A stretch of DNA of 64,000 bases from Ophelia neglecta (lineage: Eukaryota), in the NCBI GenBank assembly GCA_965285935.1, contig OZ260663.1, forward strand, positions 78,926,001 through 78,990,000. The letters are read 5' to 3'. Both the position numbers and the translations under genes were made by a program. This document shows, piece after piece, positions 3,292-53,300 of this stretch. Numbering within the stretch: position 1 is the first letter of the stretch; every line of letters begins with the position of its first letter. The notes under the pieces are model-generated. The model had not been told where the DNA came from, made no database searches, and saw nothing but the letters and a program-made list of their open reading frames with translations.

Positions 3292-3720
3292 CAAGTTCAA
3301 GTTCAAGTTCATTTATTACTCTTCAAACCCCTGGTTTACTAACCTTAAGGTCAACAAAGGTACATTAATTTTATTTTATTCATACAAATACATGCGCGAG
3401 ACAATACTCAATTTTAATAAATTTTTAATATATATTTACCAAATCTAGCCAAATTACACATTTTTTAACATGTTTGATATTGAAAAGCTGAGACATTTTC
3501 ATCATACGGGATTAATAAAATAAAATTGACATAAGAGTTCTTTTCTTTTAAATCAAACAAGACAAACAAACAAAACGTGAAATTCATCTCCTATATCGCC
3601 AAGATTAACGTTACATTTGGTGTAATGTTCAGTCTTAACTTTATATGGTGTGTGAGTCGGCTGTAACACAAGTTGAAACATATTTTAATACATGCCTTCT
3701 GGATATAGGCCTAATCAAAT
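3292..3720 (-). mobile_element. Degenerate LINE 3' end remnant
   Basis: Minus-strand translation near 3565-3625 gives CNVNLGDIGDEFHVLFVC, the C-terminal CCHC-type motif of APE-RT LINE ORF2 proteins. The element ends AATAAA-(TGAACT)3 at ~3292-3316. No intact ORF. Confidence 0.65.
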
Positions 3721-4515
3721 GCCAATTTAGGCTTGGAAATCACTTTTTCATCAATTTTGAAAAAAAGAAACGGTGGGCTATTCAATTTAACGATATAATC
3801 AGACGATAGGGCAATGTTTCTGGTACATATTAACGCTGCACTGACTGATTTAATTTGAGCCTAAGGTAAAATCCCTGTGTCTGGGTCCACCTTGTACCGA
3901 GACTGGACTTTTTTCAATGTATTATAACATGTGGCACTTGTTTGATGCCATCTCTTACACCCATTTTGTGATACATACATATACACCAAGGATGGCTTTT
4001 GCATATGAAAAGGGGCCTTTTTCTAAACCATTGACAAAGTGTAACATATTGTCAGTGCTTAGGGATTACGTTAAACAGAGTCACACATTTTGAAAATTTC
4101 CAAACCCTCCAGTCTTTCGCAATTGGAATATATATACACCACTATATGACAAAATAAGCACAATGACTATATATCTATATGGCACAGCACACAGGCTAGT
4201 CATATCGTGTATATATATAATTTATATCATACAGCTATAAATGAGCCACAAGGATGCTATATTTATCTTAATACAAGGAACTTTATATATAATACCAAAT
4301 ATAATTTTCACTGATAAATAAAGTAAAACGATGCCGGACATGCTTCGTTTGCCACAAGGGATTTGTTTTACAAAGCGGGAGTTTTATTTATCAATATAGA
4401 TAGTGAAAATAAGTAAGCAACCGATTGAGAATACTGTCGTCAGTTCTATTTGAGTTCCTATCACACCCTTCCTAAACCTCGCATTCGTACATAAAAATAG
4501 TCTTACATTATTCTA

Positions 4516-6060: not shown

Positions 6061-9000
6061 CTAGGTCTTGTTGTAATTGTATAGAATGTCATTCGTAACA
6101 TAGTTCCTAAGTGCATACCAACACTTTGCACCAACTTTAAAGAATTCATGCCTGTCAATTTCAGAAAGACTAATACCACTGAAAAACTCACAAATAAAAT
6201 CCTCATCGTTCATCATAAAGAGTTTAGTTGAGATCAATGGATGGAGTTTGTCGATTAGCTCCTCCCAGTAGACATCTCTCCTTGTAGAGAAATGCTGGCA
6301 TTCACATACGAGATGGAGAGCACAATCGCGGTAAGAGGAGACACAGTAAGGGCAACTGCGGACAATACCGGTATTTCTCGTGGCCAGTTTCACGAGGAAA
6401 GCAAAGTGTGGCTGGAGTCCACAAGACGTTTTTGCTACCTTCCAAATTTCACACGGCTCGAGGATAAACGGATGGAAAGCACGGAAGGCTATGTAGTCCG
6501 GGTTACCGAGCATTGTGCGAAGTGTCTCTGCCTGGACATAGTCAGCTAGGTGCTCTCTAACCGCGATTTTCCATGTAGAACGGCCGCACCAAACCCCTTG
6601 TTCAAGATAAACAACCAACTTGTCCATTAGGTTTATTCTGTCTAGAAGTGGCAGCAGCTCAGAGCAGTAACCTCTGTGACTTCCAGTAACCTTGAGTGCA
6701 AAATGATGAATACGTAGCCTGAGCAGACGCGAAGGGAGAGCAAGCGGGGGTAGTCGTAATATGGTGGCCAGAAACTGAAGGCGTCTCCTGTCAACCTCGA
6801 CTGCTATGTTACTCATGCCCACAAGTGAAGTTACCTTAGCAGAGTGGCAACGAACTGGCAAATTTTGAATGACTTTTAGACAAAATCGATGAGCAGTTTC
6901 GAGAATGACCGATTCTTTCTTTGAAACACACGTCCAGAGTTCACTGCCGTAGAGAGCCTTGGGAAGGACGACGGATCGGTATAACTTTATAGAGGTTAAT
7001 GGAGTGAGTCCTTCCGGGTGGGTACCTATTCCCACCAGACCAGCCACTTGAGAGCGAAGGGCGTTAGCGGCAGTGTTAGCGCGGTCGTCGGACGTACGCG
7101 AACACATCTTTATCCCGACGTGCGTCGCCTCCCTTACAGGTCGGATAAAGGAATCTCCCATTTTCCAGACTAGGTTATGAGGGTGGTCTGATCGACGAGG
7201 CTTCGGTTCGAACACTAGTATTTTAGTTTTGGAAGCATTGAATTTGAATCGCCAGAGTTTACTATAGTCATAACACATATCCAGCATCCTCTGTAGAGCG
7301 CGAGGAGTAAGGGAGATCAACGCGATGTCGTCCGCCTGTAGGATTGCGCCGCAGAACAAGCCGTTGATAAAGACGCCATTTCCAGTTTCCCTTATTGATT
7401 TTGGTAGCTCGTCGATAAACGCACTGTATAACTGGGGTCCTAGAACACTACCCTGCCTCACGGACTGGCGTATTGCGAATTGTTCTGAAAATGAGCCATC
7501 GTACAACACTACTGCCCACATGTCTGTGTAGGCATTGAGGAGTAACAGCCACAGTCGTCCGCAAATCCCGATGCCGTGGAGTTTCACCAGCAGGCCGTTG
7601 GACCAGACGCAGTCAAAAGCCGTGGCGCTGTCCAAAAGGCACAAATAAATTGTCGAGCCCCGCTCGTTAGCCCAGTGAATGGATTCTTGGACGATGAATG
7701 AAGACATAAGGGAACTCCTCCCTTTTCTGAAGCCGTTTTGGACTTCATCGGGAAAGTTCAGGCTGCGGCCTACTGGGGTAAGCAGCCAGTTGTCCCATCG
7801 TCGAAGCAGTATGCGTTCCCACACCTTATAAAGGACGGGAAGTAGGGAAATCCCCCTGTAATTTTTGCGGTCGTCATTATATTTATTTGCACCCTTATGA
7901 AGGGGTATAATAACTCCCTGCTTCATGTCCTTTGGCACATGACAAATATCGTACATTGCGTTGTAAAGCTTTGCCAATTTTGCCAGTAGAAAGCGGCCGC
8001 CGAATTTTACATGTTCATATACAATTGAGTCTGCTCCTCCACTTTTACCGTATTTTGTTCCGTCAATCGCATTTTGAACTTCTGAGCCGGTAATGGGAGT
8101 ATCCATTATCGGGTCCTCCTCAATAGCTGCCCTGACCTTAATTTCCGCCAACTTTTGTTCAACGTCTGCCCTCTGCTGAACGTCGAATTCGGGATCTATA
8201 AGAAAGTCAAACAGCTTGCTAAAGTGTTCCGCCCATACCATCCTTACGGCCTCGGGGTCTCTCACAATACGATTTTCTATACAGAGTTCGTGGACTTTAA
8301 GCTTGTTTTTGTTGCGCCTGCAGTTAATAAGTCTCCATAGTTGTTCCTGATCATGCTCGGCCGCTTCGTCCACCTCGTGATAAAAGTCGGCTTCCATGGC
8401 AGCGATAAGTCGTCTCTGTACGGCTCGAAAACTCCTTTTGGCTTCTTTATAGTCACAGAATGACTTGTGCTGACGACCCCTGGGCCGACCTTGATGTAGC
8501 CACGTCAGCCGCAGGTTTTTCATGTTGTCATGGAGATGATTTAGGTCCTGCTTTTTCCAGTATGGTTTTATATGAGGAAAAAATTGCTTCACTGGGATGT
8601 GTTTTACCGCACAACTCTGGAGGCAGTCGACCATGGCGGAGTACTCACGGTCGATGGCTCTCTTGCTATCCATGACGGACTCAGGTAAGCTGTTCAGGGT
8701 CTGAGTCAGTTCGTTCTCATACGCCAGCGTGAGTTGAGAACGCACAGCTTTCCGCCAGTTGAGTGACTTCGTGATATTTTTGGGTTTCTTGGTGGACTTC
8801 ACCAAGGGTTTCACGGCCAGGGTCACACAAACTGGCAGGTGATCGGACACGTTGAGATGGTGATCATCAATAATACAAGATTCTGTAATAGTGTCTGATA
8901 AGCGTTGCCGACTGATAATGTGATCGATAAGTGTACGGGGTCCATCCTGATAGGGTTCCCTTGTGTATGGTGGACCAATACATCCGCACTGTACCATCCA

Positions 9001-9693
9001 CGAAACAAGATCCCGTGACCGTAACAGGTAGTCAGCGGCCTCCCGTCTTTTCCGCAATATATATGACTCTATATGACAGGCGAAGCGGTCACCGCTTATG
9101 TTCGAGTTGAAGTCGCCCATTAAGATTACCTCGTGGTTTGAGGAGTAGTAATCATAGAGAGCCTCTACTTCGTTGAGAACACACAAGAAAGGTTCGACGC
9201 CTTGATCCGAGGAGGGGAGATATACACCAATCAGGACTAAGTCCAGTGGATAGGTAAGTTTTATTATTTGTATTCTGTCATGGTCGTGAGGAATGTCTCT
9301 GAGGTGCGCTGTGAGATGGTTTCTCCACAAAAAGGCTGTTCCTCCCATGTATCGTTTACCTGGGCGGCTGGGATCTAAACCTTCGTTACGCCGGTCAAAT
9401 TTGCCCTTGCTGTCGTAGTCATTGTGAATTTGATTCAGAACTTCGCTCATACTTTCGCGTAGCCAGTGTTCTGAGAGAAACAGAATGTCCGGTTTTAAAA
9501 CTTTCAGTAGGTGGTTCGTATAAGTCATGCTGCGGAGGAGACCCTGGCAGTTATAGGCTGCCAAAATTAGCTTATTGTTTAAAGCCATCGTAAGTCCATT
9601 GACCGCTCGCATTGTCATTACGTCGTTGGTGGTTCCTCGCTGTTCCGCGCTCAATCCAAAGTCTGCAATAAGCACTACCAGGCCAAAAGTCAT
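6061..9693 (-). CDS. LINE ORF2: AP endonuclease + reverse transcriptase + C-terminal CCHC zinc finger
   Basis: 1210-aa uninterrupted ORF. APE motifs YNCQG, LSEHW, GDFNS, IDHI, SDHLPV; RT motifs NYRGISLL, QNGFRKGRS, AFDCV, VRQGSVLGP, QADD; C-terminal CPYC...HLVCEC. The true start may be the ATG at 9588 (MALNNKLILAAYN). Confidence 0.95.
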   Translation of the reverse strand: MTFGLVVLIADFGLSAEQRGTTNDVMTMRAVNGLTMALNNKLILAAYNCQGLLRSMTYTNHLLKVLKPDILFLSEHWLRESMSEVLNQIHNDYDSKGKFDRRNEGLDPSRPGKRYMGGTAFLWRNHLTAHLRDIPHDHDRIQIIKLTYPLDLVLIGVYLPSSDQGVEPFLCVLNEVEALYDYYSSNHEVILMGDFNSNISGDRFACHIESYILRKRREAADYLLRSRDLVSWMVQCGCIGPPYTREPYQDGPRTLIDHIISRQRLSDTITESCIIDDHHLNVSDHLPVCVTLAVKPLVKSTKKPKNITKSLNWRKAVRSQLTLAYENELTQTLNSLPESVMDSKRAIDREYSAMVDCLQSCAVKHIPVKQFFPHIKPYWKKQDLNHLHDNMKNLRLTWLHQGRPRGRQHKSFCDYKEAKRSFRAVQRRLIAAMEADFYHEVDEAAEHDQEQLWRLINCRRNKNKLKVHELCIENRIVRDPEAVRMVWAEHFSKLFDFLIDPEFDVQQRADVEQKLAEIKVRAAIEEDPIMDTPITGSEVQNAIDGTKYGKSGGADSIVYEHVKFGGRFLLAKLAKLYNAMYDICHVPKDMKQGVIIPLHKGANKYNDDRKNYRGISLLPVLYKVWERILLRRWDNWLLTPVGRSLNFPDEVQNGFRKGRSSLMSSFIVQESIHWANERGSTIYLCLLDSATAFDCVWSNGLLVKLHGIGICGRLWLLLLNAYTDMWAVVLYDGSFSEQFAIRQSVRQGSVLGPQLYSAFIDELPKSIRETGNGVFINGLFCGAILQADDIALISLTPRALQRMLDMCYDYSKLWRFKFNASKTKILVFEPKPRRSDHPHNLVWKMGDSFIRPVREATHVGIKMCSRTSDDRANTAANALRSQVAGLVGIGTHPEGLTPLTSIKLYRSVVLPKALYGSELWTCVSKKESVILETAHRFCLKVIQNLPVRCHSAKVTSLVGMSNIAVEVDRRRLQFLATILRLPPLALPSRLLRLRIHHFALKVTGSHRGYCSELLPLLDRINLMDKLVVYLEQGVWCGRSTWKIAVREHLADYVQAETLRTMLGNPDYIAFRAFHPFILEPCEIWKVAKTSCGLQPHFAFLVKLATRNTGIVRSCPYCVSSYRDCALHLVCECQHFSTRRDVYWEELIDKLHPLISTKLFMMNDEDFICEFFSGISLSEIDRHEFFKVGAKCWYALRNYVTNDILYNYNKT

Positions 9694-34300: not shown

Positions 34301-36478
34301 CTGCACTCTGTGGCAAATATGCAAAAAGCCACAATGACAATGTACTGTGGTTTGAAAAACCTAGTTATATTTTAATCTTTAATCTCTGGCTCCAAAGAAA
34401 CACAAATCTTAGCTGCTATATATAGTAGCTATCTAGTTGCTAGCACTTTCAATTGTCATCATTAGAGAGTTTTGGGCCAAATCTCAGTCTTGTATGACCT
34501 AAATGCGAAAAGCACAGATACTTTAGATGGCTATCATGTTATATACTACCCATCCTAGGGACTGATGATAAAATAAAAGGGTTTAATCGTCCAGCACTAT
34601 GTTATATAAGAAAAGCTGCTACCAATGCTTACCCTTACAACTGCCAAAGTGAAGAAAAAATTCCAGTGGACACCATACTCGGAAACATGCTCTTGATAAT
34701 CTGTGCTTTTGACAGCTGCCATTCTAGCAAATCCCAGAATCCACAAAGGCATTGTCGATGAAATCGACTTAAACACTGCTATCATTTTGGAGCTAAAACA
34801 TCTGGAGGTGAAAGACTGCAGTAAAATATCACCATAAGCCTTGGGAAATTACATTTTTACCAAATACCTGTTGTTTTTAGTTTAGATTGAGCTACATATC
34901 TAAAAAAAAATTACATTTATATGACCTTGTATACCTGTAGTGACAAATTCTTTACTGTCACAAGATATGAATTCTGCATTTCAGAAATGGCACAAAATCC
35001 TTTTATTTAGATAATCTATGATAATTAAAAGCACAAAATTTATGCCAAACAAATGATGTAAATATTGCAGTCATTGTGAACAATTTTGATGACCAAAAAT
35101 CATACTCTGTTTACTGTAAAAGTTTCCTCAATTTTTCTTTGAACAATTTCACAAATTAAAGTGTCCTTAACAACATGTACAGTGAATCATTTTTGTTCAG
35201 TATCTTAGTTTTAACTCATTTCATTCTTCTGGGATTCTCTCATAGCTGTCCCTTATCAAGAGATGTCCCCAATGTAAACTATAAAACTGATTTTACAAAC
35301 TAAAAATTCCCATGGGACTGTATAGTTAAGTTCATGAATATGTACCTTGTCTGTTCATGTTTTCCTCTGGCTTCAGGGGACACAATGGCATTGGAAATAA
35401 CAAATGCACCAACACCCACATCCATCAAACCAGTGCCAAATGTCTCGGCTTTAGCATATCTTCTCGGGAATATCACAAAATCTACAGCTAAAATTGATAT
35501 GGCAGTGGCAATGTTCACATATGCTCTAAATGCAGAAATGAATGGTTGCTTTCCAGAGACTTCAATATTTTTTATACTTTTCCATGTTACTGGCTGGTCA
35601 TTTTGAAGTATTAGACTGGAGACCTTTTCACTAAAGAGCATCACAGCAAAAATAGTAAACCCAAGGGCTGAGTAAACTCCTTCTAAATGGGAAGACATCA
35701 CAGTGAAGCCACACAATACTGGCATGATGAGGAATAGAAAGTCAATAATAAATTTGTACCTGAAAAGAAATTAACAAACTTCTCAATCATGTTTTGGAGT
35801 CTTAAATAGTGGAATAAAGACAAATAATTGTTAAGCAGATTACCTATTGCCATTAGGCAAGTCTGCCATATATACTGGGTTCCAAATTACCCCCCCCCCC
35901 CCCCCCAACATTGACTTGTCCACCCGCAACATATTATCATATCCTTATGAGCCACTCCACTTCTGCTCGTTTCTTTCTAAACAAATGTCTTCCCCCCACT
36001 ATGGTCCAAAATGAAAGCTATGGGAAAAAACTCAGTTGTTCCTGGATGACCAATGAGAAAACAGCCTGCATGAGTATTCAAATTGCAAAAGTTTTCTTTG
36101 AAAACATACGTTTACACAATCTTATATTTAAATGAAGGGGGCACATAATATCGCTAGGGAGTGTGATCCATGCAAACATTGGTGCATGTACCCATGTAGG
36201 ACCCTGTAGGCTTACAGCCAGGCTGTAGTTTTATAACAGTTTAATAACAGCTCCCATTGAAATATTTACAGAACCTCTATTATCGCTTGAATATGTGTAA
36301 ACTAAATAACTTACCTCGGCGCCGGATGACGGCCTTTGTAAACCCATGACATAAAAACATTCTTCAGTAGTACACAGGCCGGTGCAATAGACACAACCAG
36401 TGCTATTTCCAACACTGAAGTGCCTTGATGGTTGCTCACAAATTTCTCTTTTAGATCTTTGTAGCTGTCAGACGACAT
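31382..36478 (-). CDS. PIGW: Phosphatidylinositol-glycan biosynthesis class W protein (GPI inositol acyltransferase, GWT1 family), ~486 aa
   Basis: Exons 36478-36315, 35759-35346, 34801-34633, 33004-32754, 32311-32170, 31839-31752, 31614-31382; all GT-AG and phase-compatible (1461 nt). Motifs [97 protein letters not shown]. Confidence 0.95.
33433..33588. mobile_element. MITE (TA TSD), family B, in PIGW intron 3
   Basis: TA-CAGTGGAACCCCT.ATGAA.GACC...GGTCTTTCATCAGGGGTTCCACTG-TA. Confidence 0.8.
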
Positions 36479-41686: not shown

Positions 41687-44637
41687 TAGATATATGATGT
41701 TTTTATGTAAGGCCAGTTACAATTTGTGTTCTGTTCTCACTGTCTCAGACAACCAAAATCCACAAATATAAAACTTTTGGCTCAGGAACACAATTCTCTG
41801 CATGACTATCACATGAGTCACAAAGCAGACACAACTAATGGTAGCATTTAATGTATTTTTGTTGGTGCTTTGTAACAAAGTCTGTTATGTTACAGAATTC
41901 TTGGTGTTTACTATGACCACATCCTTGTTTTTAAATATGGCAAATTTGCACTTGTAATTGTTTAGAAAATATAACTATTGGCCAATTTGTACATGCATAC
42001 CACATGCATACTAATGGTATGATCATGAACTGTTAGACATTGCTCAAAGTCTTTGCACAAAATTACGTTTGAAGGTGACACATATTAAGACTAAACACAG
42101 TACTTGCAGTATAATACTGGTTCATAAGACTATAGAAACTTTAGACTATAGACTGTTTTAAGACTATAGAAACTGTATTACTTCTTGTCTTCCTCGGCAT
42201 CTAACTCTAAACCCGTCTTCTTGAACAAACTGTGTACTTTTTGTACACCATATTCGTATGTTTTTCTGCCAGTGGTAACTGGGTAAGTATTACTGTTTTT
42301 GACAGTATTATTATAGACTTTCAGGTGGAAAGAAAAAATAAATGCCCCTCTATCAGTGAATCTCTACTACTATACCAGTATAGAAATTGTTGCCGTCATA
42401 ACCATACTGTACAGCAAATAAAGATGTTTTTTTTTATTTAAACCAGTTGAGTTGTGTTCTATTCTATCAGCTGGCTGAAATACTAGCAGCTCACTACTAG
42501 CCTGTCAAGCTTTCAAGGTCAGTTAAACTAAAATACAGATTTGAATATCCCTTGCCTTGGGTTACCAGTCACAGCTGACTATTGACCAATCACAACCAGG
42601 TAATAACACATCTAGACAGGTTGCAAGAATAAGGACAAGTGATTCCCAAGACAAGCTTGGTCAGGTTTCAGACCCTGTCTAGTGTGTGTTTGATAGGACC
42701 AGTTGGATATAAGATCAGTAAGCCTGGCTCAGCTTCTAATCTACCAGTAGGGGGCAGCACTACTATACATGTATAGTTGAAACCATTATTAGGGCTCATT
42801 GTAATCCATATAGGCATCAGACAAAAATTACACAGTAATGGAGACTTGATTTTGGTAATGTAGACTTTCAAGTCATCACTGCCAGAAATATGTTTTGAGA
42901 GTTCAGAAATTGGGCTTCAATACAAAACTACGAGAGAGCAAATGTGCACAACTGTTGCATAACATGGTATGTCGGACCACAAAAGACACAACAATGAAAA
43001 TGTGAGCATCGGAGAGCTATAATGCATATATTTTATGCAAACAATAATATGGTAGACAATTGGGACAATCATTGACTTCAATGTACACTTAGGCAGTTGC
43101 ATTTTAATATTTCCTATATAAAGGCTGTGGTAAGATCATTAAATTACTGAACTATAACTGTCAAATAGCGATATAGCCCAACAGTATCTTTACATTACAA
43201 TTCAGATACATGTTTCTATATATTTAATTAACTTTATTTCATACATTTAAATACAACAGATCTGATAAATGCTGTTTATGGAGAGAAATTAGGCGGAGTC
43301 TGGACGGACTTATAGTGACACAATTAAGTATAGGCCTACATTCAAATCATTCCATGGTCAATTGAGGTCTTGTGATTCTAAATATTTCAATGGAGCCTTC
43401 TGAGGTCCTTAACTAAATTGGAATCCCTAAAAATTTGTTATTTCACCTTAACGTCTAGGAAGAAAAGGCCACTTAAATTCCTAGTGTTAAATTCCCATGC
43501 CCAGCTGAAAGTGTACAACTAGCCACCTGCTTGCCACTCTTTCTTTAACAACAAACAGGTTTCTATGTGAGAATTGTGGCCGATGGTTAGCAGTTTGCAA
43601 TATCTTCAGATGGCCATATTTGATTGCCCTGTTAGCGCCACAAGTGCACGTTTGAATTACATTCAACCTTAGGATAGCAAGTTACTCAATTTTATATACT
43701 GGGTAACAATTTGTCTTAAAAATTAGTTTACTGGCTACTTTTAAATAACTGTGTTCATGGTAATATTATCCATTTCTATTCACTTTCCTAATAGCTTAAC
43801 CCCAAATCTATCAACCTGTATCCCGACATTACTTACACTCAAGCCAGATTAGTTACCATACTACTTACAGGCCACGAAATTGAAGGCATTTACTTAGGTT
43901 ATTTTAATTCAGCAACAGGACTTACTTTAAATCCAATTGTTTTCACTCAACACAAAAGGCAGCAATAGACCGGCATATAGGGTCAGGTTTATTCTAATTT
44001 TCAATATGCAGGGTTCAGATTGGCCCCATGGCCATCGAATTAGGAGGAGCCACTTCTAGTCTAGTATTTGAAATGTTCATTTTTAAGGTGCTTCAAACCA
44101 AAGATCCCTGGTTAAGTGCATTAAAATTTGGCACTATCTCAGTATATGATCAGCCAATTTGCCTTCAAATCACACTGTCAATATAGTACTTAACTGAAAG
44201 GAAGTATTCTGCAGGTAGAATAAGTACCTAAATGAGGACAGACAAATACAAGTTCCTTAAAAAAGTTGACCCCTTTATTGATAGTTTGGTGCTCCATTTG
44301 ACCTTTCACCTAAAATGGCCTTGAATATTTTGTTAATCCAGTCAAATTAAATAATAAACTAGGTTATAAGATACAAACATGAATCCTGTAAATATTATAT
44401 ATTTTTAATCAAGTAATATACAAATGTTTTTGTTCCACACAATAAATTGGCCACTCAGAAAACTATCCACTCGCTTGTTCAGAAACTTTTCAAGCCAGAT
44501 GATGTCAAGTTAACAGCAAAGCACACAAGACTTCTAACAATCCCTTTCCTCCTAGCACTGGGCAAGTGTAACCCTCTGCCAGCTTGGTGGACACCGTTCA
44601 TATATAGGATAGGACCAGAGGTAAACAGGAGCACTCC

Positions 44638-46990
44638 CTATTTCACTTCAGCCTTTGATGCCTCATCAAAATTTTCAACTAAGTCTGAAAGTAGAAAAAA
44701 TTATAATAGCCACAATTCTTATATGAATATGCTCTGGAGTAGTTTCCTTTCAAACAAGGTTACCATAAACAAGGACATTTTTCATATACAGGAACATCCA
44801 AAAGTACTTTCAAACTTAACATACTGGTCACAGGACATTTCCTAGCAGAGAAATGCTAGAAACTGATTTTCCATGGAAAGTATGGTAATGTAGGGAACCT
44901 CATACAGACAAGTTTTGCAACTTTGTCATTTTCATGCTTGTGAACATTCCTGATTAACAGAGGCCACCAGAAAAGATCTATCAGCTTTAAAAGTGTAGTT
45001 TAAAGAATCATACCGGGGACCTCGTCATCCTCCTCGTCGATTTCTTCGGTAGCTGGTTTCAGACTCTCGCCGATACCTAAGTGGGAGAAGTTTGTTTTAT
45101 AATAAAGAACACATCCTGAACAATTCTTTGTTTAGATCAGAAAACACAGATGGTTGTTTCCACACAAACTTGCCATTCACTGAAATCTCAGACAAGAACA
45201 TTGGTGAAAACAATTATTTTCAAACTTGTATCTTTGTAAATCTACTCCCAGGCAAATTTGAGTTCCTCTCGGCAACTTTTTGCGACTTTCCTTGAGTGCT
45301 TTAATGGTTATGTTTTCGCACTGGACTAAATTTGTCCTTGGCGGAAAAGACACTCCATGTGTCTTTAAACTTTGTGGCAAGAGATCTGCAGGGCCTACAT
45401 ATACATATGGATACAATATTCGCCCGTTTAATTTCATGGCCACCAGAATTTCTTGAAATTCAGGGATTTAAAACCCACAAACATTTTTACTTGGACAGTA
45501 TGGTTTCTCTCTCTTCTTTCTACACTGGTTTACATTTTTGGCAATGCAATATAAAGAAATGCCTATATCAGATCTGTTGAGCTTTAACTAACAATCATGT
45601 GCTATCAAAGTTATTAACAGTGTCATCACTTAAGGCATTTTATCAGAAATCTAAACAAAAAATTAACATCACCAGCTCCATAAATACATACCACTGCTAG
45701 ATACAGTTGTTGCAAGTTTCTTGAGGTTAGATAAGCTCTCTGCCCCAAGCTGGTTCAGTATACCGGGGAGCATTTCAGTAATTTCTGGAAAAAATTTAAA
45801 TGCCAGAGTTAAAACTTAATGTGTTACTAAAACATCAAAGTAAAATTAACTGCCCCATCCCATTTTCAAAATACCAGTTTATCCTTCAACAGCATGTTTC
45901 ATAGCCCTTACGTTTGTTTTCTGCATGCCCAGTGACTGCAAATGTGTTTGCAGCTAGGGAAGCCTGGACTTTGGGGTTGTTAAAGTGTATCACTTGACCG
46001 TCTTCTTTAATCATATTCACCTGTAAAAAAAGAACACAATCATAGTCGAGAGACAAAGCTGAGCATTTGTGATTTTTCTGCATGACTGAACCTGTTCAAA
46101 TAACTCACCAGCTTTTTGTCACAGGTAGAGGCATTTATGAGAAACTCATGTTCCTCCTGGCAGTATCCCCAAAAGTTTATTTTTAATCTTAATAATTTAT
46201 TATATGGCATGTAGCGTTTTGAGGAGTCATTTCTAATACCACCTAAGATGCCACCTTTTTCCTTCAGATCTGTTGAGCTTTATGTGAAATATCATAATTG
46301 TGTCAATCAAAGAATTGATCATCATGGGAAATTGGCATTATTTATTAACAAAAAGCAAAAATAAATTGGCCACAATATTAACAGCTTTCATGATTTATCC
46401 AGAGTTGCAACCAAGTCTTATCATCAAAAGAAATCAATTGGCTCCACACAGAGTTTTGGTACTAGGGTGCTGCAGCATAATGACACCACCTAGTTGTGAA
46501 GGTTTCATAAAAGCTTCTGAAGTAACATTGCCAAGGGAAATATTTGGAACAGAATGTTTTTTTAAATATCAAAACAACCTACCTCCTCTATGCCAGGGAT
46601 ATTATTGACAGCAAGCTTTTTCAAAGAACTCTGGAGCTTTTTGTCATCTGTGGTGGCAGTTCTATGTACAACCTTCTTTTTTCTCCTTGCAGTACCCTAC
46701 AAAATGCATTTTTGAATCATTGTGTGTATTTGCAGAAAGTTATCCGATATGATACTTCAAACTATTTTAGATGCCACATTTTTTCTTCAGATCTGTTGAG
46801 CTTTATATGAAATATCACAGTTATATCAATCAATGTATAGATCATCACAAGGGCATATCTATAAAAAAGGGCCACAATATATTCCATTAATGTTCCAACA
46901 ATAAAGTTTAGCTGTGCAAAATGAAACATAAATTACCTTTCCACCAATTCGCACTTGAGCCTGAAGCAGTTTTAACTTTTCAGCATTCAT
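44638..46990 (-). CDS. BTF3L4: Transcription factor BTF3 homolog 4 / nascent polypeptide-associated complex beta subunit, 159 aa
   Basis: Exons 46990-46937, 46696-46583, 46020-45912, 45784-45692, 45076-45014, 44684-44638 (480 nt). [90 protein letters not shown]...[13 protein letters not shown]...[15 protein letters not shown]. Confidence 0.97.
45568..45629 (-). ncRNA. Box C/D snoRNA, copy 1 (BTF3L4 coding intron 4)
   Basis: GTGATGA(C)-CACTGTTAATAACT-TTGA(D')-...ATGATTG(C')-...AAAGCTCAACAGAT-CTGA(D); 8-bp flanking stem AAATGCCT/AGGCATTT. Confidence 0.85.
46264..46325 (-). ncRNA. Box C/D snoRNA, copy 2 (BTF3L4 coding intron 2)
   Basis: ATGATGA-TCAATTCTTTGA-TTGA-...ATGATAT-...AAAGCTCAACAGAT-CTGA; flanking ATGCCA/TGGCAT complementarity. 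Confidence 0.87.
46787..46848 (-). ncRNA. Box C/D snoRNA, copy 3 (BTF3L4 coding intron 1)
   Basis: GTGATGA-TCTATACATTGA-TTGA-...GTGATAT-...AAAGCTCAACAGAT-CTGA; the D box is ~90 nt upstream of the 3' splice site, a typical spacing. Confidence 0.87.
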
Positions 46991-47262
46991 GTTTGTATAT
47001 TATTTGAAGCTGAAAACAGAAAGAGATGTAATATTAATATACTAAACAATGTAGTGATTTACTACACTAGTCATAAACAAGTTATTAATGGTATGTTCCA
47101 TTTTCTCAGAGAGGTCTCGCTCATTTATTAAAATGACATTACAATTTCATGCTCGGAGGAGGGAATGCCACTGGAATACCCCTCTTGCAAAGTTAACTTT
47201 CCAGAAAAATGTAAATACAGGTTGGTCTTAAAGTGGGATATGTCTAGTTGCTTGCATTTTCT

Positions 47263-47323
47263 TCAGATCTGTTGAGCTTTATGAGAAATTTCACAGTTTA
47301 TCAATAAAAGAATAGATCATCAT
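47263..47323 (-). ncRNA. Box C/D snoRNA, copy 4 (BTF3L4 5' non-coding region)
   Basis: ATGATGA-TCTATTCTTTTA-TTGA-...GTGAAAT-...AAAGCTCAACAGAT-CTGA; terminal stem TTTCT/AGAAA. Confidence 0.85.
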
Positions 47324-47839
47324 AAGAAATGGGGTACTGACAACAACAAGATCCACATAGTCTATGTTACTAGAGATTTACACAATGTGTTGAGGGTTAT
47401 ACGTTTTCTTTTGTTAAGGTACATGAAAGGTAAATGAATTTCAACAGAATAGTTCACTCTTAAAAGCATTTCTAATATTTAGAACTTAAATAGAAGTAAA
47501 AAGATTCCGCACAAGTGTGAAATAATTGTGGCTCTTAGGTAAACTTGCCAGAGAACCCCAGAGAGTGTCAATGTCCATTTTCCACAGACAGCTCACTGCA
47601 GCTAATGTAAAAACAACATTCTTTGTAGAGACATTTGCGGAGGTATTTCTCAGTACTCAAGATACCTTAAACTAGTATTATGCACATATGACACTAGATG
47701 TTTCAAATTTCCTGAACAACCCCTTGTTCTGCCGTCAATGTGCCACCCTGGTGTCACACTAACCCACAATAACATAAGCCACATTAATTGACCCCCTCAA
47801 TTTGACATTTCTCGACAGGAAAATTTGCATATTGTATCG

Positions 47840-47988
47840 TAATTGTGACTGCCAGCGTTTGGCAGTTCAGCCGTAATCTTTATAAAAAAGATTGCCCCAA
47901 ACAAGTCACTGTCACAAGTAGGCACTGTGGCGATATGACCGATCAGTGTCGAAAGCCACGTAAAAACCCCAAACAACAACAACAACCT
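47840..47988 (+). mobile_element. Probable SINE 3' part
   Basis: Ends ...GTGTCGAAAGCCACGTAAAAACCCCAA(ACA)4, a tail structure typical of invertebrate SINEs; no head region identified. Confidence 0.45.
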
Positions 47989-48222
47989 TGATGTCGGCAC
48001 ATAGGCCTACTACAAACAGGCCAACACAGCATCTCATTGTGGCCGACTCTGGTACCATCAGTGCGGCTGTCAAACAGCCATCAGAGCCTCAAAGCGCCTG
48101 AAAAAGTGCCAACTTGGATACAGAGTATTGGAATATACCTCTGGCAAAGCTTACTTTTAGAAATCTGAATAAATAGGATAGGTTGATCATGTTGCCGGAC
48201 ATGGCTAGTTCTGTGAATTTCT

Positions 48223-48283
48223 TCAGATCTGTTGAGCTTTATGTGAAATTTCACAGTTAATCAATTTAAGAATAGATCATCAT
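48223..48283 (-). ncRNA. Box C/D snoRNA, copy 5 (BTF3L4 5' non-coding region)
   Basis: ATGATGA-TCTATTCTTAAA-TTGA-...GTGAAAT-...AAAGCTCAACAGAT-CTGA; terminal stem ATTTCT/AGAAAT. Confidence 0.85.
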
Positions 48284-49417
48284 TAGAAATAAAGTACAGA
48301 AAAAACAACAAAAGAACAAAAAAGAGAAACTTTCCAAGCAAGAGAGTTGATGGACCTTTACTCCTTTCTATATGGACGTTTCCATGCTTTTATCTTGATT
48401 TTACATACTCTCCAACTGCAACACTGATGCAAGTCAGATCCTATTACACACTACTTGCCTGAAAATTACTACTTATCAACATGTTTTTTAACATAACCAA
48501 AGTGATAATAATAGGTATAACATAAGGGTGTATGCTCTTCCTTAGTGTGTTTCGCAAGGGCGCCAGTGGCAGGCTGCTAATTATTGGTATCGGGCCACTG
48601 AAGAACAGGGTTGGCATTCTTCCGGGAAGATAGGTATTTCTTCCCTTCCCTGGGAACTTTTTGAAAAATCAAATTACGTTTAATTGTTTACAATATCTTA
48701 TACTTATTTCAATTACCAACATACATACAATTTTATATTAGAAGACATATTTCACTAGAGCCAGTTATCACAGTAGTTATCAAAAAGTGGGCTAATTCAA
48801 AATCGTCATTTATAAAGCCATGATCACAAATGGAGCTTGTTTTTTCTTCATTTTTTTTTGCAATCTTGTTTTCTTACTTGACAGATATTAACAGTATTAG
48901 ATCTTCGCTTATTTTGCAAAAAACTGTTTATATAACATAATTATAGCCACTCTTTTAAGTCCAAATAAGGCTTTGTGTCAACTTTGTAATAAATACAAAG
49001 TCATACACTTTTGTTTTCAGTTGGCAGACAGAATGTTATTTTATAAAAGCCCATCTAAATTGTGGGTTAGGCAATTCTGCAGCTTATTAGCAGGTTTGTG
49101 AACAAAGTTATCAAATTGTAAATGTCAAAATTTGACAACTATATATAGGGAAAAAAAAACCCCATAGAAGTTTGAAAAAATTGCGTCTCCTGAGAAAGCT
49201 CTCCAGATAGTAGCACTCTTCCAGGCGGACAGCACTATAGGGGCTCTTGTCTATTCCATTTTCATTACAGATCCGTAAGTACTGCTAATAAAAATTACAT
49301 TTTGATTCACTTGGGAGTTGATTGGAATATGACTTTGGCAAAGTAAACCTTCCAAAATTGGTAAAATTAGGTTGATCAGACATGATGTGACATGCCTATA
49401 AATTGTGTGCATTTTCT

Positions 49418-49478
49418 TCAGATCTGTTGAGCTTTGTTTGAAATTTCACAGTTTATCAATCAAAGAATAGATCATCAT
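49418..49478 (-). ncRNA. Box C/D snoRNA, copy 6 (BTF3L4 5' non-coding region)
   Basis: ATGATGA-TCTATTCTTTGA-TTGA-...GTGAAAT-...AAAGCTCAACAGAT-CTGA; terminal stem TTTCT/AGAAA. Confidence 0.85.
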
Positions 49479-49984
49479 AAGAAAGATATTGTAGCAGAAA
49501 AAAACAGTGGAACCTATTCCATATGTACTGAGGTTGGTGGAACTCATAGGTACTTTGGAAGTAGGTCGAATGTCAAAATTTGACAATTTTTGAAAAAACA
49601 AAGTGAACACACTAAAAAGATCCTATTCATCCAATCATGATAGAGCCATTTGGCCACCATTGAGAACTGGCAAGGACTAGCATCCAAAGCAAGGACACAC
49701 GATAATTCCGTATCTAACAACACGGTCTAATGATAATCCCAAGCTTTGGTTTTGACCACTGAACAAGCCATGCTGACAGACTGACATGCGTTGTCAAAGA
49801 CCAAATATGACAGCACGCGTGAGAAGTGGCTTCGGTCCTTGTTATCAACATATTCAGCGCGCAGTAACATAAGAAATCTTGGGTATTAAAGACCGTAAAA
49901 TGGTTAACTACAATGGGACATAACTCACTGATTTTCACCAGAAACCCGGTGTTATCATTTTTACTAGAAACCGGTAAAACAGAC

Positions 49985-50080
49985 CTGATAAATCAGCTTT
50001 CTTTAACCCACGAGGAGCACAAGATGGCGGGCCGGAAAAGAGGGCATGTGACGTCATGATTTATAGAAGCCGCTTCCGGC
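49985..50080 (-). promoter_or_regulatory. TCT-motif/5'TOP promoter and putative non-coding first exon of BTF3L4
   Basis: Minus strand, in order: ETS-like CCGGAAGC (50072-50079), CTATAAAT (50060-50067), CRE TGACGTCA (50049-50056), polypyrimidine initiator CCCTCTTTTCC (50034-50044), YY1 site CCGCCATCTT (50021-50030). Candidate donor CAG|GTCTGT at 49985/49984. Confidence 0.7.
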
Positions 50081-50269
50081 AAATGGTCCAATACTCTCAA
50101 AAATAAATCAACTAGATTTTATTCAATTGACCACCGAGAATGATAAAACATTGACAACTTTCCAAGTAAAGAATTATATTTATACCAATCTACATCAAAT
50201 TTAGAGGTAAATCACGGTAAATATTTAAAACAGACACTTGTTATTGAGAGTATTTGCAAGTGCCCTTCT

Positions 50270-50310
50270 CCTCAAATCCCGCAGTTTTGAGATTTAAAGG
50301 CGCGAAATTG
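50270..50310 (+). promoter_or_regulatory. E2F/CHR-like elements upstream of NASP
   Basis: GGCGCGAAA (50299-50307), TCCCGC (~50277-50282) and TTTAAA (50293-50298) lie ~60-90 bp upstream of the ATG, consistent with an S-phase histone chaperone. Motif-only evidence. Confidence 0.45.
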
Positions 50311-50366
50311 TCGAGAAGATTAGAAGTGTCCTGTCAATTGTCCAGCAAATCCACACAATATTCACC

Positions 50367-53300
50367 ATGGCCGAGGTTGCTACTACTGTACCTGAAAAGA
50401 TGGAAAGGTAGAGTATTTCGTTGGGATAATCTTACAGCCATTCATTACGCGTCTATTGAACAAAATATGTAAGATATTTGACATTTTAAGTGGGCTCAAC
50501 GAAACTTGGTTGACAAACACAGCCGGCTGAAGGAACAAAGAAGCCATTTGCCATGTTTGACTGCATAGTCCGCACATGGTTTTTTAGCAATGTTGAGCGT
50601 TTTTAGGCACATTGTTGCATGTCTCTTCAGTTAGCGATCACTGGTTATTACAGGATCTAAAAGACAAATGCAACAACACCTGGAAGAATCAAACGTTTTT
50701 ATAGTCGGTGTTCGATTTCCGAGGAGCCGGCTACAAACCGGGGGCTGCAGATTTCGAAACTAGTTGGGAGTTGTCAGCTTAGAACTCCCAGTGATATACA
50801 CAAGTAACATTGAAAAATCCACCATTTATTCAAGTTTATTCAATTTGTTTATGTAAATAGACAAGTTGGGAAGAAATATATTCCATTTTTACGAAACTCT
50901 CGAGCTCTCATGTGTTTTTACATTACACTCAACTATTAGATCACAATTCGATCCCAGTACAGATAAAAATTCTCTCTCAGCGGAATCCAAATAATTGTCC
51001 AGACGATATTGGCATTAATGAAAGGATTTTGGTGACCGCTTAATAGGTTGATAATAAATACAGAATGTCATTTATATTATTTGAGATAGAAACCACGCAT
51101 CAAACTTTATGAAAAATGCAATACAAAAATTGCATCGGGAGTATCAGGCTTTCTCCAATTGCGTCTTAGATATCGGCCTAGGCATCAAACATCGTTATTT
51201 TAAGCACTCTACTCTGTGAGCTAATGTTTCAAATAGCTGTCAATGTTTTTAAACAAGTCACTCTATCTTGAAAACCAGCTTTGCAAACATCTCACTATAA
51301 TAGACCGACACATGCGCAAGAAACAAAAGATCACTATCCTCTAGGCATACATTCTCTTAAGGATCTGGTATATATTGGTGCATTTGGATACACATTGTCA
51401 GGGATCATCTGGAAGGGCGGCCTTGGGCCAATAGACCTTTCATATTTTTAGAAACCCGTACAAAATGGGTATACTGCGCTAATCGCCCATAGCCACATAC
51501 ACATTGATAATTGGTATGCTCCTCTAATTGTCACGCCCATAGCAGCCAACCGTGCTGGCTACCTATAAGTTAATTATATGACATTGGGATCACTTGCCAT
51601 CACAGTCTCAGGCACATAAACAGTTGCGAGTGAGTGATCCGCCAATCATGCTTTATGCACTCCAACGGCTCGACGGTGGCCGCCATCCGATTGGTTTGAT
51701 GTAGGTCAGGTGAAGGTAATTAGAACAATCACATTTATCGGGTCTCCCGCTCTTCGGCATGCTTTTCGTATGAGTGGAATAGATGCCGGTGTTATAAAGT
51801 TGCGCATGAATTATCTTATATTCTGCAAGGCACCGCTGTGCGCAGTCAACTGGCCGATAATGCCACCCAAAAGGAAATTAACACCAATTCAAAAACAAGA
51901 AAGCATCAAGTATATATTCACAGTGAGTTTATGGCACACCATGATTTCTTTGCCCTTTTCTTGTCGGATTTCACATTTTCAGCCTAACTAGTAACTAAAG
52001 TTTGCACTGCACAATTCAATGCTGTAGATCTACATGTACATATTTCACACAAGCTTCAGCTATCAATCAATTTGCGGTATTGTCAAGGGGCAGAAATTCG
52101 AGCATCCAACACAGCCCCGTATTTTAATGTTATAACAATATTTAGTATTAGTTGCCCTATCCAACATTATAAAAATGAGGGTTGTTGTCCAATAAATGAA
52201 AATAAGATTATATGGGTAAAAGTACACTAAAGGAGGCCAGAGGGGGTAGTCCTCTTCATACATGTCTCATTCTGTGTTTAATGTGTGGAGCGTTTCAAAA
52301 CTTGGCAGACAGGGAACACACATAATTATCTTCAAGATGACATAATATTTTTTTGTATCAATGCCATAATTTTATAGTGAATGGATGTTTTATTCCAAAA
52401 ATAGCCTCTTTTTAGGCATGTCAAACGTTACATTTCAGGGGTTGTCCTATTGAGAGTGAATAAATTATGTTGCCGACTTACATTTTGCTATGAGTTTTAT
52501 TTGTTGACTGTTGAGCAAATGAATAGGTAATTATAAAAGAAAAGAGGCATGCTCTACCTTTTCTCTTTACTGAGCTGCGTACTCCGAAAAACGGCGTTAC
52601 ACACGTGTCGGTGTTGTCAATGAAATACCACGTATTTTATTTTTCTATACGCTCCTATCTTTATAATCTTTGTTGTTTTATTCTTTCGTGGTTATATTGT
52701 TCCGCGCATCTGCTACCCACAAAACACAGAAGGCAACTCATTGTGTTACTTGCAGAACAACAAGACGTTAATTTAGGTGGGCTGGTATACGTTTTTTGCT
52801 CCGACACGTGTATAACGGGGCCGATAAATGCGCTGAAGAAATTGGAACTGGGGCGAATTTACTTGTGTCTGCATGTGCCGTTGTGTAGCACGTCATCAGT
52901 TGTCGCGTATCAACCCCAGCGGAAGCGTCATAGACTCATCATGGCGGGTCGTGGAGCAAGTTAGGTTTCGCAATGTCAAAATAAATTGTGCGACACGGTG
53001 TAACGGCGCCCGACACGGGTGTACAAACATCATCATTTCGTGCAATAATATGCATAGATTTACTTGACAACAAAATGAACAAAGTAAAAGGGGCGAAGTT
53101 CGGAATATTCTAATGTATAACCCTGCTTCCGTGGGCGATAAGGTGGCAGGTGGCAGCGTTGTGAAGACGCGCTGTCAAACTTGGTCATACCGCAGCGTAG
53201 CGTTTGACACAATATTCAGCTTCTTGTGTCACGTAGAACGTAGCTTTTGACAATTGTAATTAGTAACACGCTTTGCAGTAGTGACTGTTACTTTAATATT

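What the first reader, a model, noticed from the sequence alone, without database searches (positions are those of the whole stretch)
45568..49478. Six paralogous box C/D snoRNAs hosted by the BTF3L4/NAC-beta gene
Seen: six 61-62-nt units on the BTF3L4 sense strand (45568, 46264, 46787, 47263, 48223, 49418). Each has RTGATGA...TTGA...RTGA...CTGA and a short terminal stem. An 18-nt block AAAGCTCAACAGATCTGA is identical in all six while the rest drifts, which indicates selection on the D-box guide. Established: animal C/D snoRNAs are intron-encoded, often in translation-related 5'TOP genes, and spread by cis-duplication into neighbouring introns. I do not know BTF3/BTF3L4 as a multi-copy snoRNA host. 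This may be an undescribed host-guide system linking the ribosome-associated NAC complex to rRNA modification.
Basis: partly seen in the sequence, partly recalled or inferred. Interest (0 to 1): 0.85.

Follow-up and report, generated by a model that had tools for sequence, protein, structure and literature searches.

The report
Six-copy intronic box C/D snoRNA cluster
Six copies of one small nucleolar guide RNA sit in the introns of an invertebrate's NAC-beta (BTF3-type) gene and are predicted to direct one methyl mark next to the catalytic centre of the large ribosomal RNA; this is an ordinary kind of gene, but the family is absent from Rfam and I found no paper describing this host gene as a snoRNA host.

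Summary
Six 61-62-nt units lie on the minus strand, which is the sense strand of a NAC-beta gene. They share an invariant 18-mer (14-nt guide plus CUGA) and occur nowhere else in the 762-Mb genome.

The units have full box C/D anatomy: C box, UUGA D', UGA-type C', D box and co-varying terminal stems. The guide forms one 11-bp duplex with the animal's own 28S rRNA and selects G2679.

By offset tests this G equals Arabidopsis 25S Gm2410, a mapped methylation guided by SnoR29. It also equals human G3892, which is not in the human list used here. My first idea, SNORD6/Gm2411, failed that test.

The same guide sits in NAC-beta introns in at least five other contig lineages, at different introns and copy numbers. 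In other lineages it lies in eIF4G introns or beside RPL12.

No Rfam family matches. No RNA data were available, so expression and methylation are inferred.

Verdict: genuine snoRNAs, a new member of a known kind. The "NAC-rRNA link" is ordinary co-expression from a housekeeping host. The scan noted similar multi-copy intronic snoRNA clusters in this genome's HUWE1 gene.

The parts
45568..45629 (-). snoRNA copy u1, in the intron between NAC-beta exons D and E. It starts 63 nt after the 5' splice site and ends 491 nt before exon E. Most divergent copy, with an 8-bp terminal stem.
46264..46325 (-). snoRNA copy u2, in the intron between exons B and C, 243 nt upstream of exon C
46787..46848 (-). 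snoRNA copy u3, in the intron between the ATG exon and exon B, 90 nt upstream of exon B
47263..47323 (-). snoRNA copy u4, in the 5'-leader region between non-coding exon 1 and the ATG exon
48223..48283 (-). snoRNA copy u5, in the 5'-leader region
49418..49478 (-). snoRNA copy u6, in the 5'-leader region
49977..50059 (-). Conserved promoter and non-coding first exon of the NAC-beta gene. It holds a TGACGTCA site, a pyrimidine tract CTCTTTTCC and GCCATCTTG. The donor follows ...ATCAG at 49985. The block is 82% identical to the first exon of the relative L021.
   Evidence: The exact transcription start is inferred.
49311..49348 (-). Putative non-coding mini-exon, 69 nt downstream of u6 (AG acceptor, GT donor). 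Predicted only.
48114..48153 (-). Putative non-coding mini-exon, 69 nt downstream of u5. Predicted only.
47143..47196 (-). Putative non-coding mini-exon, 66 nt downstream of u4. Predicted only.
46937..47009 (-). NAC-beta exon carrying the ATG (at 46990). It is preceded by a 3' splice site, so it is not the first exon.
46583..46696 (-). NAC-beta coding exon B (start of the NAC domain)
45912..46020 (-). NAC-beta coding exon C (NAC domain)
45692..45784 (-). NAC-beta coding exon D
45014..45076 (-). NAC-beta coding exon E
44638..44684 (-). Last coding exon (stop at 44640-44638). The 3' UTR continues to about 44390.

Best explanation
The six units are functional paralogues of one box C/D small nucleolar RNA. 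They would be released from introns of the NAC-beta pre-mRNA: three from coding-region introns and three from the 5' leader. Each would be packaged through its C/D and C'/D' motifs with fibrillarin, NOP56, NOP58 and SNU13. The 14-nt element upstream of box D would then pair with 28S rRNA at CUGUUGAGCUU. The nucleotide opposite the fifth guide position, G2679 of this animal's 28S, would receive a 2'-O-methyl group. G2679 is the G right after the GACCCU stretch at the 5' strand of helix 74, beside the peptidyl-transferase ring. Shown here: the anatomy, uniqueness in the genome, selection, conservation in relatives, and a unique rRNA match at a site that is methylated in Arabidopsis. Inferred: expression, processing, snoRNP assembly and the methylation itself. 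The copies arose by duplication within the host gene. The family as a whole has changed host gene between lineages: it lies inside NAC-beta and eIF4G, and beside RPL12.
For: Anatomy:
- RUGAUGA, UUGA, UGA-type C', an 11-nt guide core and CUGA are invariant across 11 copies from four species.
- Terminal stems co-vary. Cognate 5'/3' flanks average -7.5 kcal/mol, against -2.4 for 1854 derangements, none of which reaches the observed value. With 22-nt flanks, five of the six window copies reach -6.4 to -11.4 kcal/mol and u6 only -2.8.

Selection:
- u4-u6 are 93% identical inside the snoRNA but 35-37% identical in the surrounding intron.
- u1 is only 52-65% identical to the other copies in its variable part, yet identical in the 18-mer.
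- A decayed copy in L028 has lost box D and also carries a guide mutation.

Target:
- There is a single 11-bp Watson-Crick duplex, covering guide positions 3-13, with G2679 of the animal's own 28S. No other site of 9 bp or more exists in 18S, 5.8S or 28S.
- G2679 maps to Arabidopsis 25S G2410 (offset +269 fits 13 of 14 mapped sites) and to human G3892 (offset -1213 fits 16 of 17 sites). The two mappings agree at 7 shared sites.
- Gm2410 is an experimentally mapped site guided by SnoR29 (PMC8053127).

Conservation:
- The same guide lies on the sense strand of NAC-beta introns in L021 (3 copies), L027 (2), L028/L043 (1, plus a decayed copy in L028), L085 (1) and L055 (3).
- Third codon positions are only 52% identical between the window and L021, and the introns do not align.
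- Of 85 metagenome matches, 43 pass a box C plus stem filter, against 0 of 20 matches in prokaryote genomes.

Position: most copies lie 66-98 nt upstream of a real or putative 3' splice site.
Against: - There is no expression evidence. No RNA run holds the locus, so discrete 60-75-nt RNAs, snoRNP binding and the methyl group are all unverified.
- No Rfam family reaches its gathering score. The best hit is 26 bits against a cutoff of 50.
- The duplex is only 11 bp and A/U-rich.
- The proximal stems of u3, u4 and u6 are weak (-0.7 to -2.3 kcal/mol with 12-nt flanks). u6 stays weak even with longer flanks.
- u1 and u2 lie 491 and 243 nt from the next exon, outside the usual window.
- The equivalent G is absent from the human list and from the Drosophila table, so methylation in animals has no precedent in the lists I read.
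Confidence: 0.85

Rival explanations
1. The units are genuine C/D snoRNAs, but the 28S match is not their working target. They would be orphan or multi-target guides (snRNA, mRNA or pre-rRNA chaperone role), or the site would stay unmethylated as in human, yeast and fly.
For: The equivalent G is not in the human or Drosophila lists. The duplex is only 11 bp. No methylation data exist for this animal.
Against: I estimate the chance of an 11-nt perfect match in the correct register within about 5.7 kb of rRNA at roughly 0.1-0.5%. The guide core is invariant across lineages with three different host loci, as expected for a universally conserved rRNA target. The same nucleotide is methylated by a C/D guide in Arabidopsis.
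Confidence: 0.08
2. Only some copies are functional. The others, for example u1 and u2 far from a 3' splice site, or the 5'-leader copies, would be unprocessed duplicates kept similar by gene conversion.
For: u1 and u2 lie 491 and 243 nt from the next exon. u6 has a weak terminal stem. Decayed copies exist in relatives. High snoRNA identity inside diverged flanks could partly reflect gene conversion.
Against: All six keep every box and the whole guide intact. u1, the oldest and most divergent copy, has the strongest stem of the window copies with 12-nt flanks (8 bp, -9.9 kcal/mol). This fits compensation for a poor intron position. A truly decayed copy (L028) shows what loss looks like.
Confidence: 0.05
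3. The units are a short interspersed repeat, or another intronic element such as a splicing enhancer or microRNA precursor, that only mimics C/D boxes.
For: They are tandemly duplicated with flanking sequence. There is no Rfam hit.
Against: The genome holds only six copies, all on one strand of one gene. Other near-matches lack the anatomy. Conservation follows the C/D box pattern and the stems co-vary. The 0 of 20 false-positive rate in the prokaryote control argues against chance mimicry.
Confidence: 0.02

Closest known systems
Arabidopsis SnoR29 (box C/D; guides 25S Gm2392, Gm2410 and probably Um2411; PMC8053127)
   Same: It selects the same rRNA nucleotide. Own 28S G2679 maps to At 25S G2410. 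Both are fibrillarin-type antisense guides following the box+5 rule.
   Different: SnoR29 uses its D' guide (next to a degenerate D') and has more than one target. The RNA here uses the D guide, and its D' spacer is not conserved and has no shared target. No sequence similarity surfaced in the Rfam scan. Whether the two are homologous or convergent is open.
Multi-isoform intronic snoRNAs spread over successive introns of one host. Examples are the Drosophila CD2a-d, CD3a-d and CD28a-d sets (PMC11014333, Table 1, for the isoform sets only; that they lie in successive introns of one host is from my own knowledge) and vertebrate U14 in hsc70 (from my own knowledge).
   Same: Several paralogues with one identical guide, produced by duplication within a highly expressed host gene, generally one per intron.
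   Different: The host here is NAC-beta, and I found no paper naming it as a snoRNA host. Three copies sit in the 5' leader with putative non-coding mini-exons. The target site is not used in fly or human.
Non-coding snoRNA host genes with TOP-type promoters (GAS5, UHG/SNHG type; from my own knowledge)
   Same: The 5' leader of this gene looks like a miniature version: a pyrimidine-tract start region and repeated units of snoRNA plus a short exon, with the snoRNA 66-69 nt upstream of each putative acceptor.
   Different: Here the array is fused to a protein-coding mRNA. The mini-exons are predicted only.
SNORD6 / mgh28S-2411 (vertebrate; 28S Gm2411)
   Same: It is a single-target C/D guide for a 28S G, and the target sequences look superficially alike (...AG-UUGA...).
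   Different: The site is different. The Gm2411 block maps about 950 nt upstream in this 28S (offset -686, 8 of 8 sites), not at G2679. The vertebrate RNA uses the 5' guide and sits in the JOSD3/TAF1D host. I had recalled this identity from memory, and the test rejected it.

Membership tests
Box C/D snoRNA (fibrillarin-type methylation guide) | C box RUGAUGA near the 5' end and D box CUGA at the 3' end | tested here: met
   UGAUG and CUGA are invariant in 11 copies from four species. All six window copies have RTGATGA.
Box C/D snoRNA (fibrillarin-type methylation guide) | Terminal 5'/3' stem that brings C and D together | tested here: met
   Cognate flanks pair far better than any of 1854 derangements. 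Compensatory stems differ between copies. u6 is weak.
Box C/D snoRNA (fibrillarin-type methylation guide) | Internal D' and C' boxes | tested here: met
   UUGA (CUGA in L028) and the UGA of a UGAWAU-type C' are conserved, while the spacer between them varies.
Box C/D snoRNA (fibrillarin-type methylation guide) | Antisense element of about 10 nt or more abutting box D, with the target nucleotide opposite position 5 | tested here: met
   A unique 11-bp Watson-Crick duplex (guide positions 3-13) with own 28S. Position 5 pairs with G2679.
Box C/D snoRNA (fibrillarin-type methylation guide) | Sense-strand intronic location in a pol II host gene (animal type) | tested here: met
   u1-u3 lie between mapped coding exons. 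u4-u6 lie between the conserved first exon and the ATG exon, which begins with a 3' splice site. The exon structure inside the leader is predicted only.
Box C/D snoRNA (fibrillarin-type methylation guide) | Accumulates as a discrete RNA of about 60-75 nt bound by fibrillarin, NOP56, NOP58 and SNU13 | not testable with these tools
   No RNA run holds the locus.
Box C/D snoRNA (fibrillarin-type methylation guide) | 2'-O-methyl present at the predicted nucleotide | not testable with these tools
   Only indirect support: the equivalent Arabidopsis G2410 is methylated. It is not listed for human or fly.
Any Rfam 15 C/D family (best: SNORD11B, SNORD102, SNORD20, SNORD36) | Covariance-model score at or above the family's gathering threshold | tested here: not met
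   There are 0 hits at gathering in the window. The best is 26 bits against 50, and the alignments match only the boxes, not the guide. Relatives' copies also give no hit.
SNORD6 / mgh28S-2411 | Guides the nucleotide equivalent to human 28S G2411 | tested here: not met
   The offset test puts the 2338-2411 block elsewhere (8 of 8 at offset -686). G2679 equals human G3892 (16 of 17 at offset -1213).
Plant SnoR29 | Guides the nucleotide equivalent to Arabidopsis 25S G2410 | tested here: met
   Offset +269 fits 13 of 14 Arabidopsis sites and agrees with the human mapping at 7 shared sites.
Plant SnoR29 | Sequence or architectural homology (D' guide for this site, second guide for G2392) | tested here: not met
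   Here the guide precedes box D. The D' spacers are not conserved and have no shared rRNA target. Common descent is not excluded.
Dispersed repeat / SINE | Many copies on both strands, unrelated to gene structure | tested here: not met
   Only six copies, on one strand of one gene.

The most novel reading that the evidence does not exclude
2'-O-methylation of the helix-74 G (Arabidopsis G2410, human G3892 position) may be an old eukaryotic mark. It would be kept in plants and in many protostome invertebrates but lost in vertebrates, yeast and Drosophila. Its animal guide would be an undescribed snoRNA family that has moved repeatedly between translation-machinery host loci (inside NAC-beta and eIF4G, beside RPL12). 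In this lineage it would have expanded into a GAS5-like array of snoRNA plus mini-exon units inside the 5' leader of a protein-coding gene.
Probability: 0.4. Interest if true: 0.45.

Novelty: new member of a known kind. Interest (0 to 1): 0.33.

Why it matters
It adds a well-supported box C/D snoRNA family that Rfam does not recognise, to be used in annotating invertebrate genomes. It predicts a testable methylation next to the peptidyl-transferase ring and tunnel entrance. In the lists I read, that site is documented in a plant but not in human or fly. It also gives a clean example of snoRNA birth, death and host switching: the same guide appears in different introns, in different copy numbers, and at three different translation-related host loci. 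It does not reveal a new mechanism. The link between the NAC complex and rRNA modification is most simply shared high expression from a housekeeping promoter.

Tried and rejected
1. SNORD6/Gm2411 identity. I recalled it from memory, and the offset test against published human site lists rejected it.
2. Transposon or dispersed repeat. Rejected. The near-matches L007-L009, L013 and L020 lack box C or box D anatomy. Eight weak model hits on contig C2 at about 48.22 Mb lie in repeated sequence that contains part of the guide by chance and has no box C.
3. A second guide. The D' spacers vary and share no rRNA target.
4. Expression evidence. The only runs holding the locus (X1-X3) look like DNA contigs from one sample. 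Read laying was therefore not run, because it could not show RNA.
5. Taxon. The ESM Atlas gave no taxa. A LINE ORF gave only weak bivalve hints, at 28-35% identity to Ylistrum and Mytilus proteins. "Probably a bivalve mollusc" is a guess.
6. Literature:
- BTF3 + snoRNA + intron gave nothing relevant.
- G3892, G3913 and G2409 gave nothing relevant.
- Me28S-G2717 and G2788 gave nothing relevant.
- The planarian fibrillarin paper gave no site list in its text.
7. NAC-beta loci of three other lineages (L022, L023-26, L029) lack the guide. L022, L023 and L029 also lack any Rfam snoRNA.
8. Spliced protein model. The exons were searched separately by reference.
Full report
**Observation.** No shuffle produced a single match. 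Read on the minus strand, each unit is 61-62 nt and runs from RTGATGA to CTGA. In the six-copy alignment the invariant columns are the C box, the 18-nt block and scattered single positions. When relatives' copies are added, a UUGA box and the UGA of a UGAWAU box also stand out as invariant. The window has no N.

**Not a repeat family.**
- In the whole 762-Mb assembly the 18-mer, at 0 mismatches, is found only at these six places. The three 1-mismatch hits are at the level of the reversed-pattern control.
- A looser guide-plus-box-D pattern adds two unrelated places.
- None of those extra places has C/D anatomy.
- A sequence model built from 11 copies (R1) scores the six at 51-67 bits. The next hit in the genome scores 23 bits.
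- A set of weak hits on another chromosome is repeated sequence without a box C.

**Host gene.**
- The minus strand encodes a NAC-domain protein of the BTF3/BTF3L4 type (Pfam PF01849).
- Exons, minus strand: ATG exon 47009-46937, B 46696-46583, C 46020-45912, D 45784-45692, E 45076-45014, and the last coding exon from 44684 with the stop at 44640-44638.
- u3, u2 and u1 lie in the introns after the ATG exon, after B and after D.
- The ATG exon begins with a 3' splice site 19 nt before the ATG.
- An 83-nt block at 50059-49977 is 82% identical to the first exon and promoter of a distant relative. There it lies only about 620 nt upstream of the ATG exon. The block holds a TGACGTCA site, the pyrimidine tract CTCTTTTCC, GCCATCTTG and a donor after ATCAG.
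- So u4-u6 lie in the 5' leader between exon 1 and exon 2.
- Each of u4-u6 is followed, 66-69 nt downstream, by an AG and then a conserved stretch of about 40-55 nt ending at a GT.
- Across the three units the snoRNA is 93% identical. The 115 nt downstream are 56-58% identical. Everything else is about 35% identical.
- I read these stretches as three non-coding mini-exons. This is a prediction, and a single long intron carrying three snoRNAs is the alternative.

**Structure and selection.**
- Terminal stems differ in sequence between copies but are kept. u1 has AAAUGCCU/AGGCAUUU, u2 has UUUCC/GGAAA plus an outer UGCCA/UGGCA, and u4-u6 have UUUCU/AGAAA.
- Across seven independent stem types from four species, cognate flanks average -7.5 kcal/mol. 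Derangements average -2.4, and none of 1854 reaches the observed value.
- u6 remains weak.
- In the variable part, u1 is only 52-65% identical to the other window copies, about as far as copies from other species. The 18-mer is identical throughout.

**Target.**
- I took the genome's own rDNA. The guide has one match in 18S, 5.8S or 28S: an 11-bp Watson-Crick duplex, guide positions 3-13, with CUGUUGAGCUU. Position 5 lies opposite G2679.
- I first believed from memory that this was the SNORD6/Gm2411 site. A test rejected that. I slid published lists of human methylated positions along this 28S.
- The 2338-2411 block fits 8 of 8 at a different place. The 3680-3923 block fits 16 of 17 at offset -1213, with the next best offset at 11. 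That makes G2679 the equivalent of human G3892, between Gm3878 and Um3904.
- G3892 is not in that human list.
- By arithmetic from the shared sites, the fly equivalent would be G2788, which is not in the Drosophila table.
- The Arabidopsis list fits 13 of 14 at offset +269. It agrees with the human mapping at seven shared sites and places G2679 on 25S G2410.
- Gm2410 was mapped by RiboMeth-seq, assigned to the D' guide of SnoR29, and dropped when the major SnoR29 variant was blocked (PMC8053127).
- By my own alignment from memory, the position corresponds to E. coli G2067 and yeast G2409. That places it in the 5' strand of helix 74, just after the A2058-C2063 stretch. This numbering was not tested here.

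**Relatives.** I used an ORF fragment spanning exon C and fetched the contigs that encode its closest hits.

| Locus | Copies | Position in the NAC-beta gene |
|---|---|---|
| L021 | 3 | Introns C-D, D-E and E-F, 73-98 nt before the next exon; 18-mer identical |
| L027 (ocean metagenome scaffold) | 2 | One 67 nt before exon D; the second is cut by the contig end |
| L028 | 1 intact, 1 decayed | Intact copy in intron D-E with an 8-bp stem; decayed copy in intron B-C with a guide mutation and GUGA in place of CUGA |

- L021 is distant. Third codon positions are 52% identical, and nothing in the introns aligns except the snoRNAs.
- Synteny is kept, with GWT1 and REX1B genes next door.
- A pattern scan of metagenome contigs gave 86 stretches.
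- Of 85 units, 43 have RTGATGA and a flank stem of -4 kcal/mol or better. The figure is 0 of 20 in a control scan of 596 Gb of prokaryote genomes.
- Three of those contigs carry NAC-beta exons. L085 has one copy 75 nt before exon C. L055 has three copies between exons C and D. L043 matches the L028 type in intron D-E.
- Other groups carry the same guide at other translation-related loci:
  - A 25-contig group lies on the same strand as, and downstream of, RPL12/uL11 exons. Whether those copies are intronic was not settled.
  - Another group, including termite-gut samples, lies in eIF4G introns (MIF4G, MA3 and W2 domains).
- NAC-beta loci of three further lineages lack the guide.
- No copy anywhere reaches an Rfam gathering score.

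**Interpretation.** These are genuine box C/D snoRNAs. They most likely guide a 2'-O-methyl on one conserved G beside the peptidyl-transferase ring. The family is widespread in invertebrate-type sequence, is missing from Rfam, and shares its target with plant SnoR29. Whether that reflects common descent or convergence is open. Copy number and intron position turn over within the host gene, and the host locus differs between lineages. NAC-beta is therefore one convenient housekeeping host rather than part of a dedicated NAC-rRNA circuit. The same genome has other multi-copy intronic snoRNA clusters, according to earlier notes on HUWE1.

**Limits.**
- No RNA data exist for the locus, so expression, processing, the leader's exon structure and the methylation are inferred.
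- The taxon is only guessed as a bivalve mollusc, from weak LINE protein hits.
- Yeast and E. coli numbering come from memory.
- The joined NAC-beta protein was deliberately not assembled or searched. The exons were handled one by one by reference.

Noticed in passing
window 6061-9693 (-): An uninterrupted 1210-aa ORF with an endonuclease/exonuclease/phosphatase domain and a reverse-transcriptase domain: an apparently intact non-LTR (LINE) retrotransposon. The best named protein hits are bivalve (Ylistrum, Mytilus) at about 28-35% identity.
   Followed up: partly
window 35300-35725 (-); L021 10860-14229: A GWT1 (PIG-W) exon lies near the NAC-beta gene in the window. The distant relative L021 also has GWT1, together with a REX1B gene, next to its NAC-beta gene, so local synteny is conserved.
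   Followed up: no
L028 5864-5928 (+): A decayed copy of the snoRNA lies in the intron between NAC-beta exons B and C of a relative. Box C is intact, the guide has one A-to-G change and box D reads GTGA. It is a snapshot of copy loss.
   Followed up: partly
L055 2080-3435 (+): In one relative, three copies of the snoRNA lie between coding exons C and D, about 2.4 kb apart. This implies either several snoRNAs in one intron or unannotated cassette exons.
   Followed up: no
L063 479-537 and 1348-1435 (+): A marine metagenome contig carries a close relative of the window's snoRNA (identical 18-mer). About 800 nt downstream on the same strand there is a SNORD12-family hit above gathering (44.7 bits). 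That points to a multi-snoRNA host in that organism.
   Followed up: no
G000 contig C2, 48222318-48249082 (locus L127) and C2:46628624 (L039): Repeated sequence, with hits spaced about 2.5 kb apart and a shorter internal repeat, contains AGCTCAACAGATCTGA by chance and has no box C. It gives weak hits to the snoRNA model (19 bits) but is not a snoRNA.
   Followed up: yes
window 50244-50413: A block upstream of the NAC-beta promoter is 70% identical to L021 6506-6674, where a gene is called on the opposite strand. It may be the first exon of a divergently transcribed neighbour sharing the promoter region.
   Followed up: no
window 44386-44470 (-): An 85-nt stretch of the NAC-beta 3' UTR is 80% identical to the 3' UTR of the distant relative L021, although the introns are unalignable. 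It may be a conserved regulatory element.
   Followed up: no
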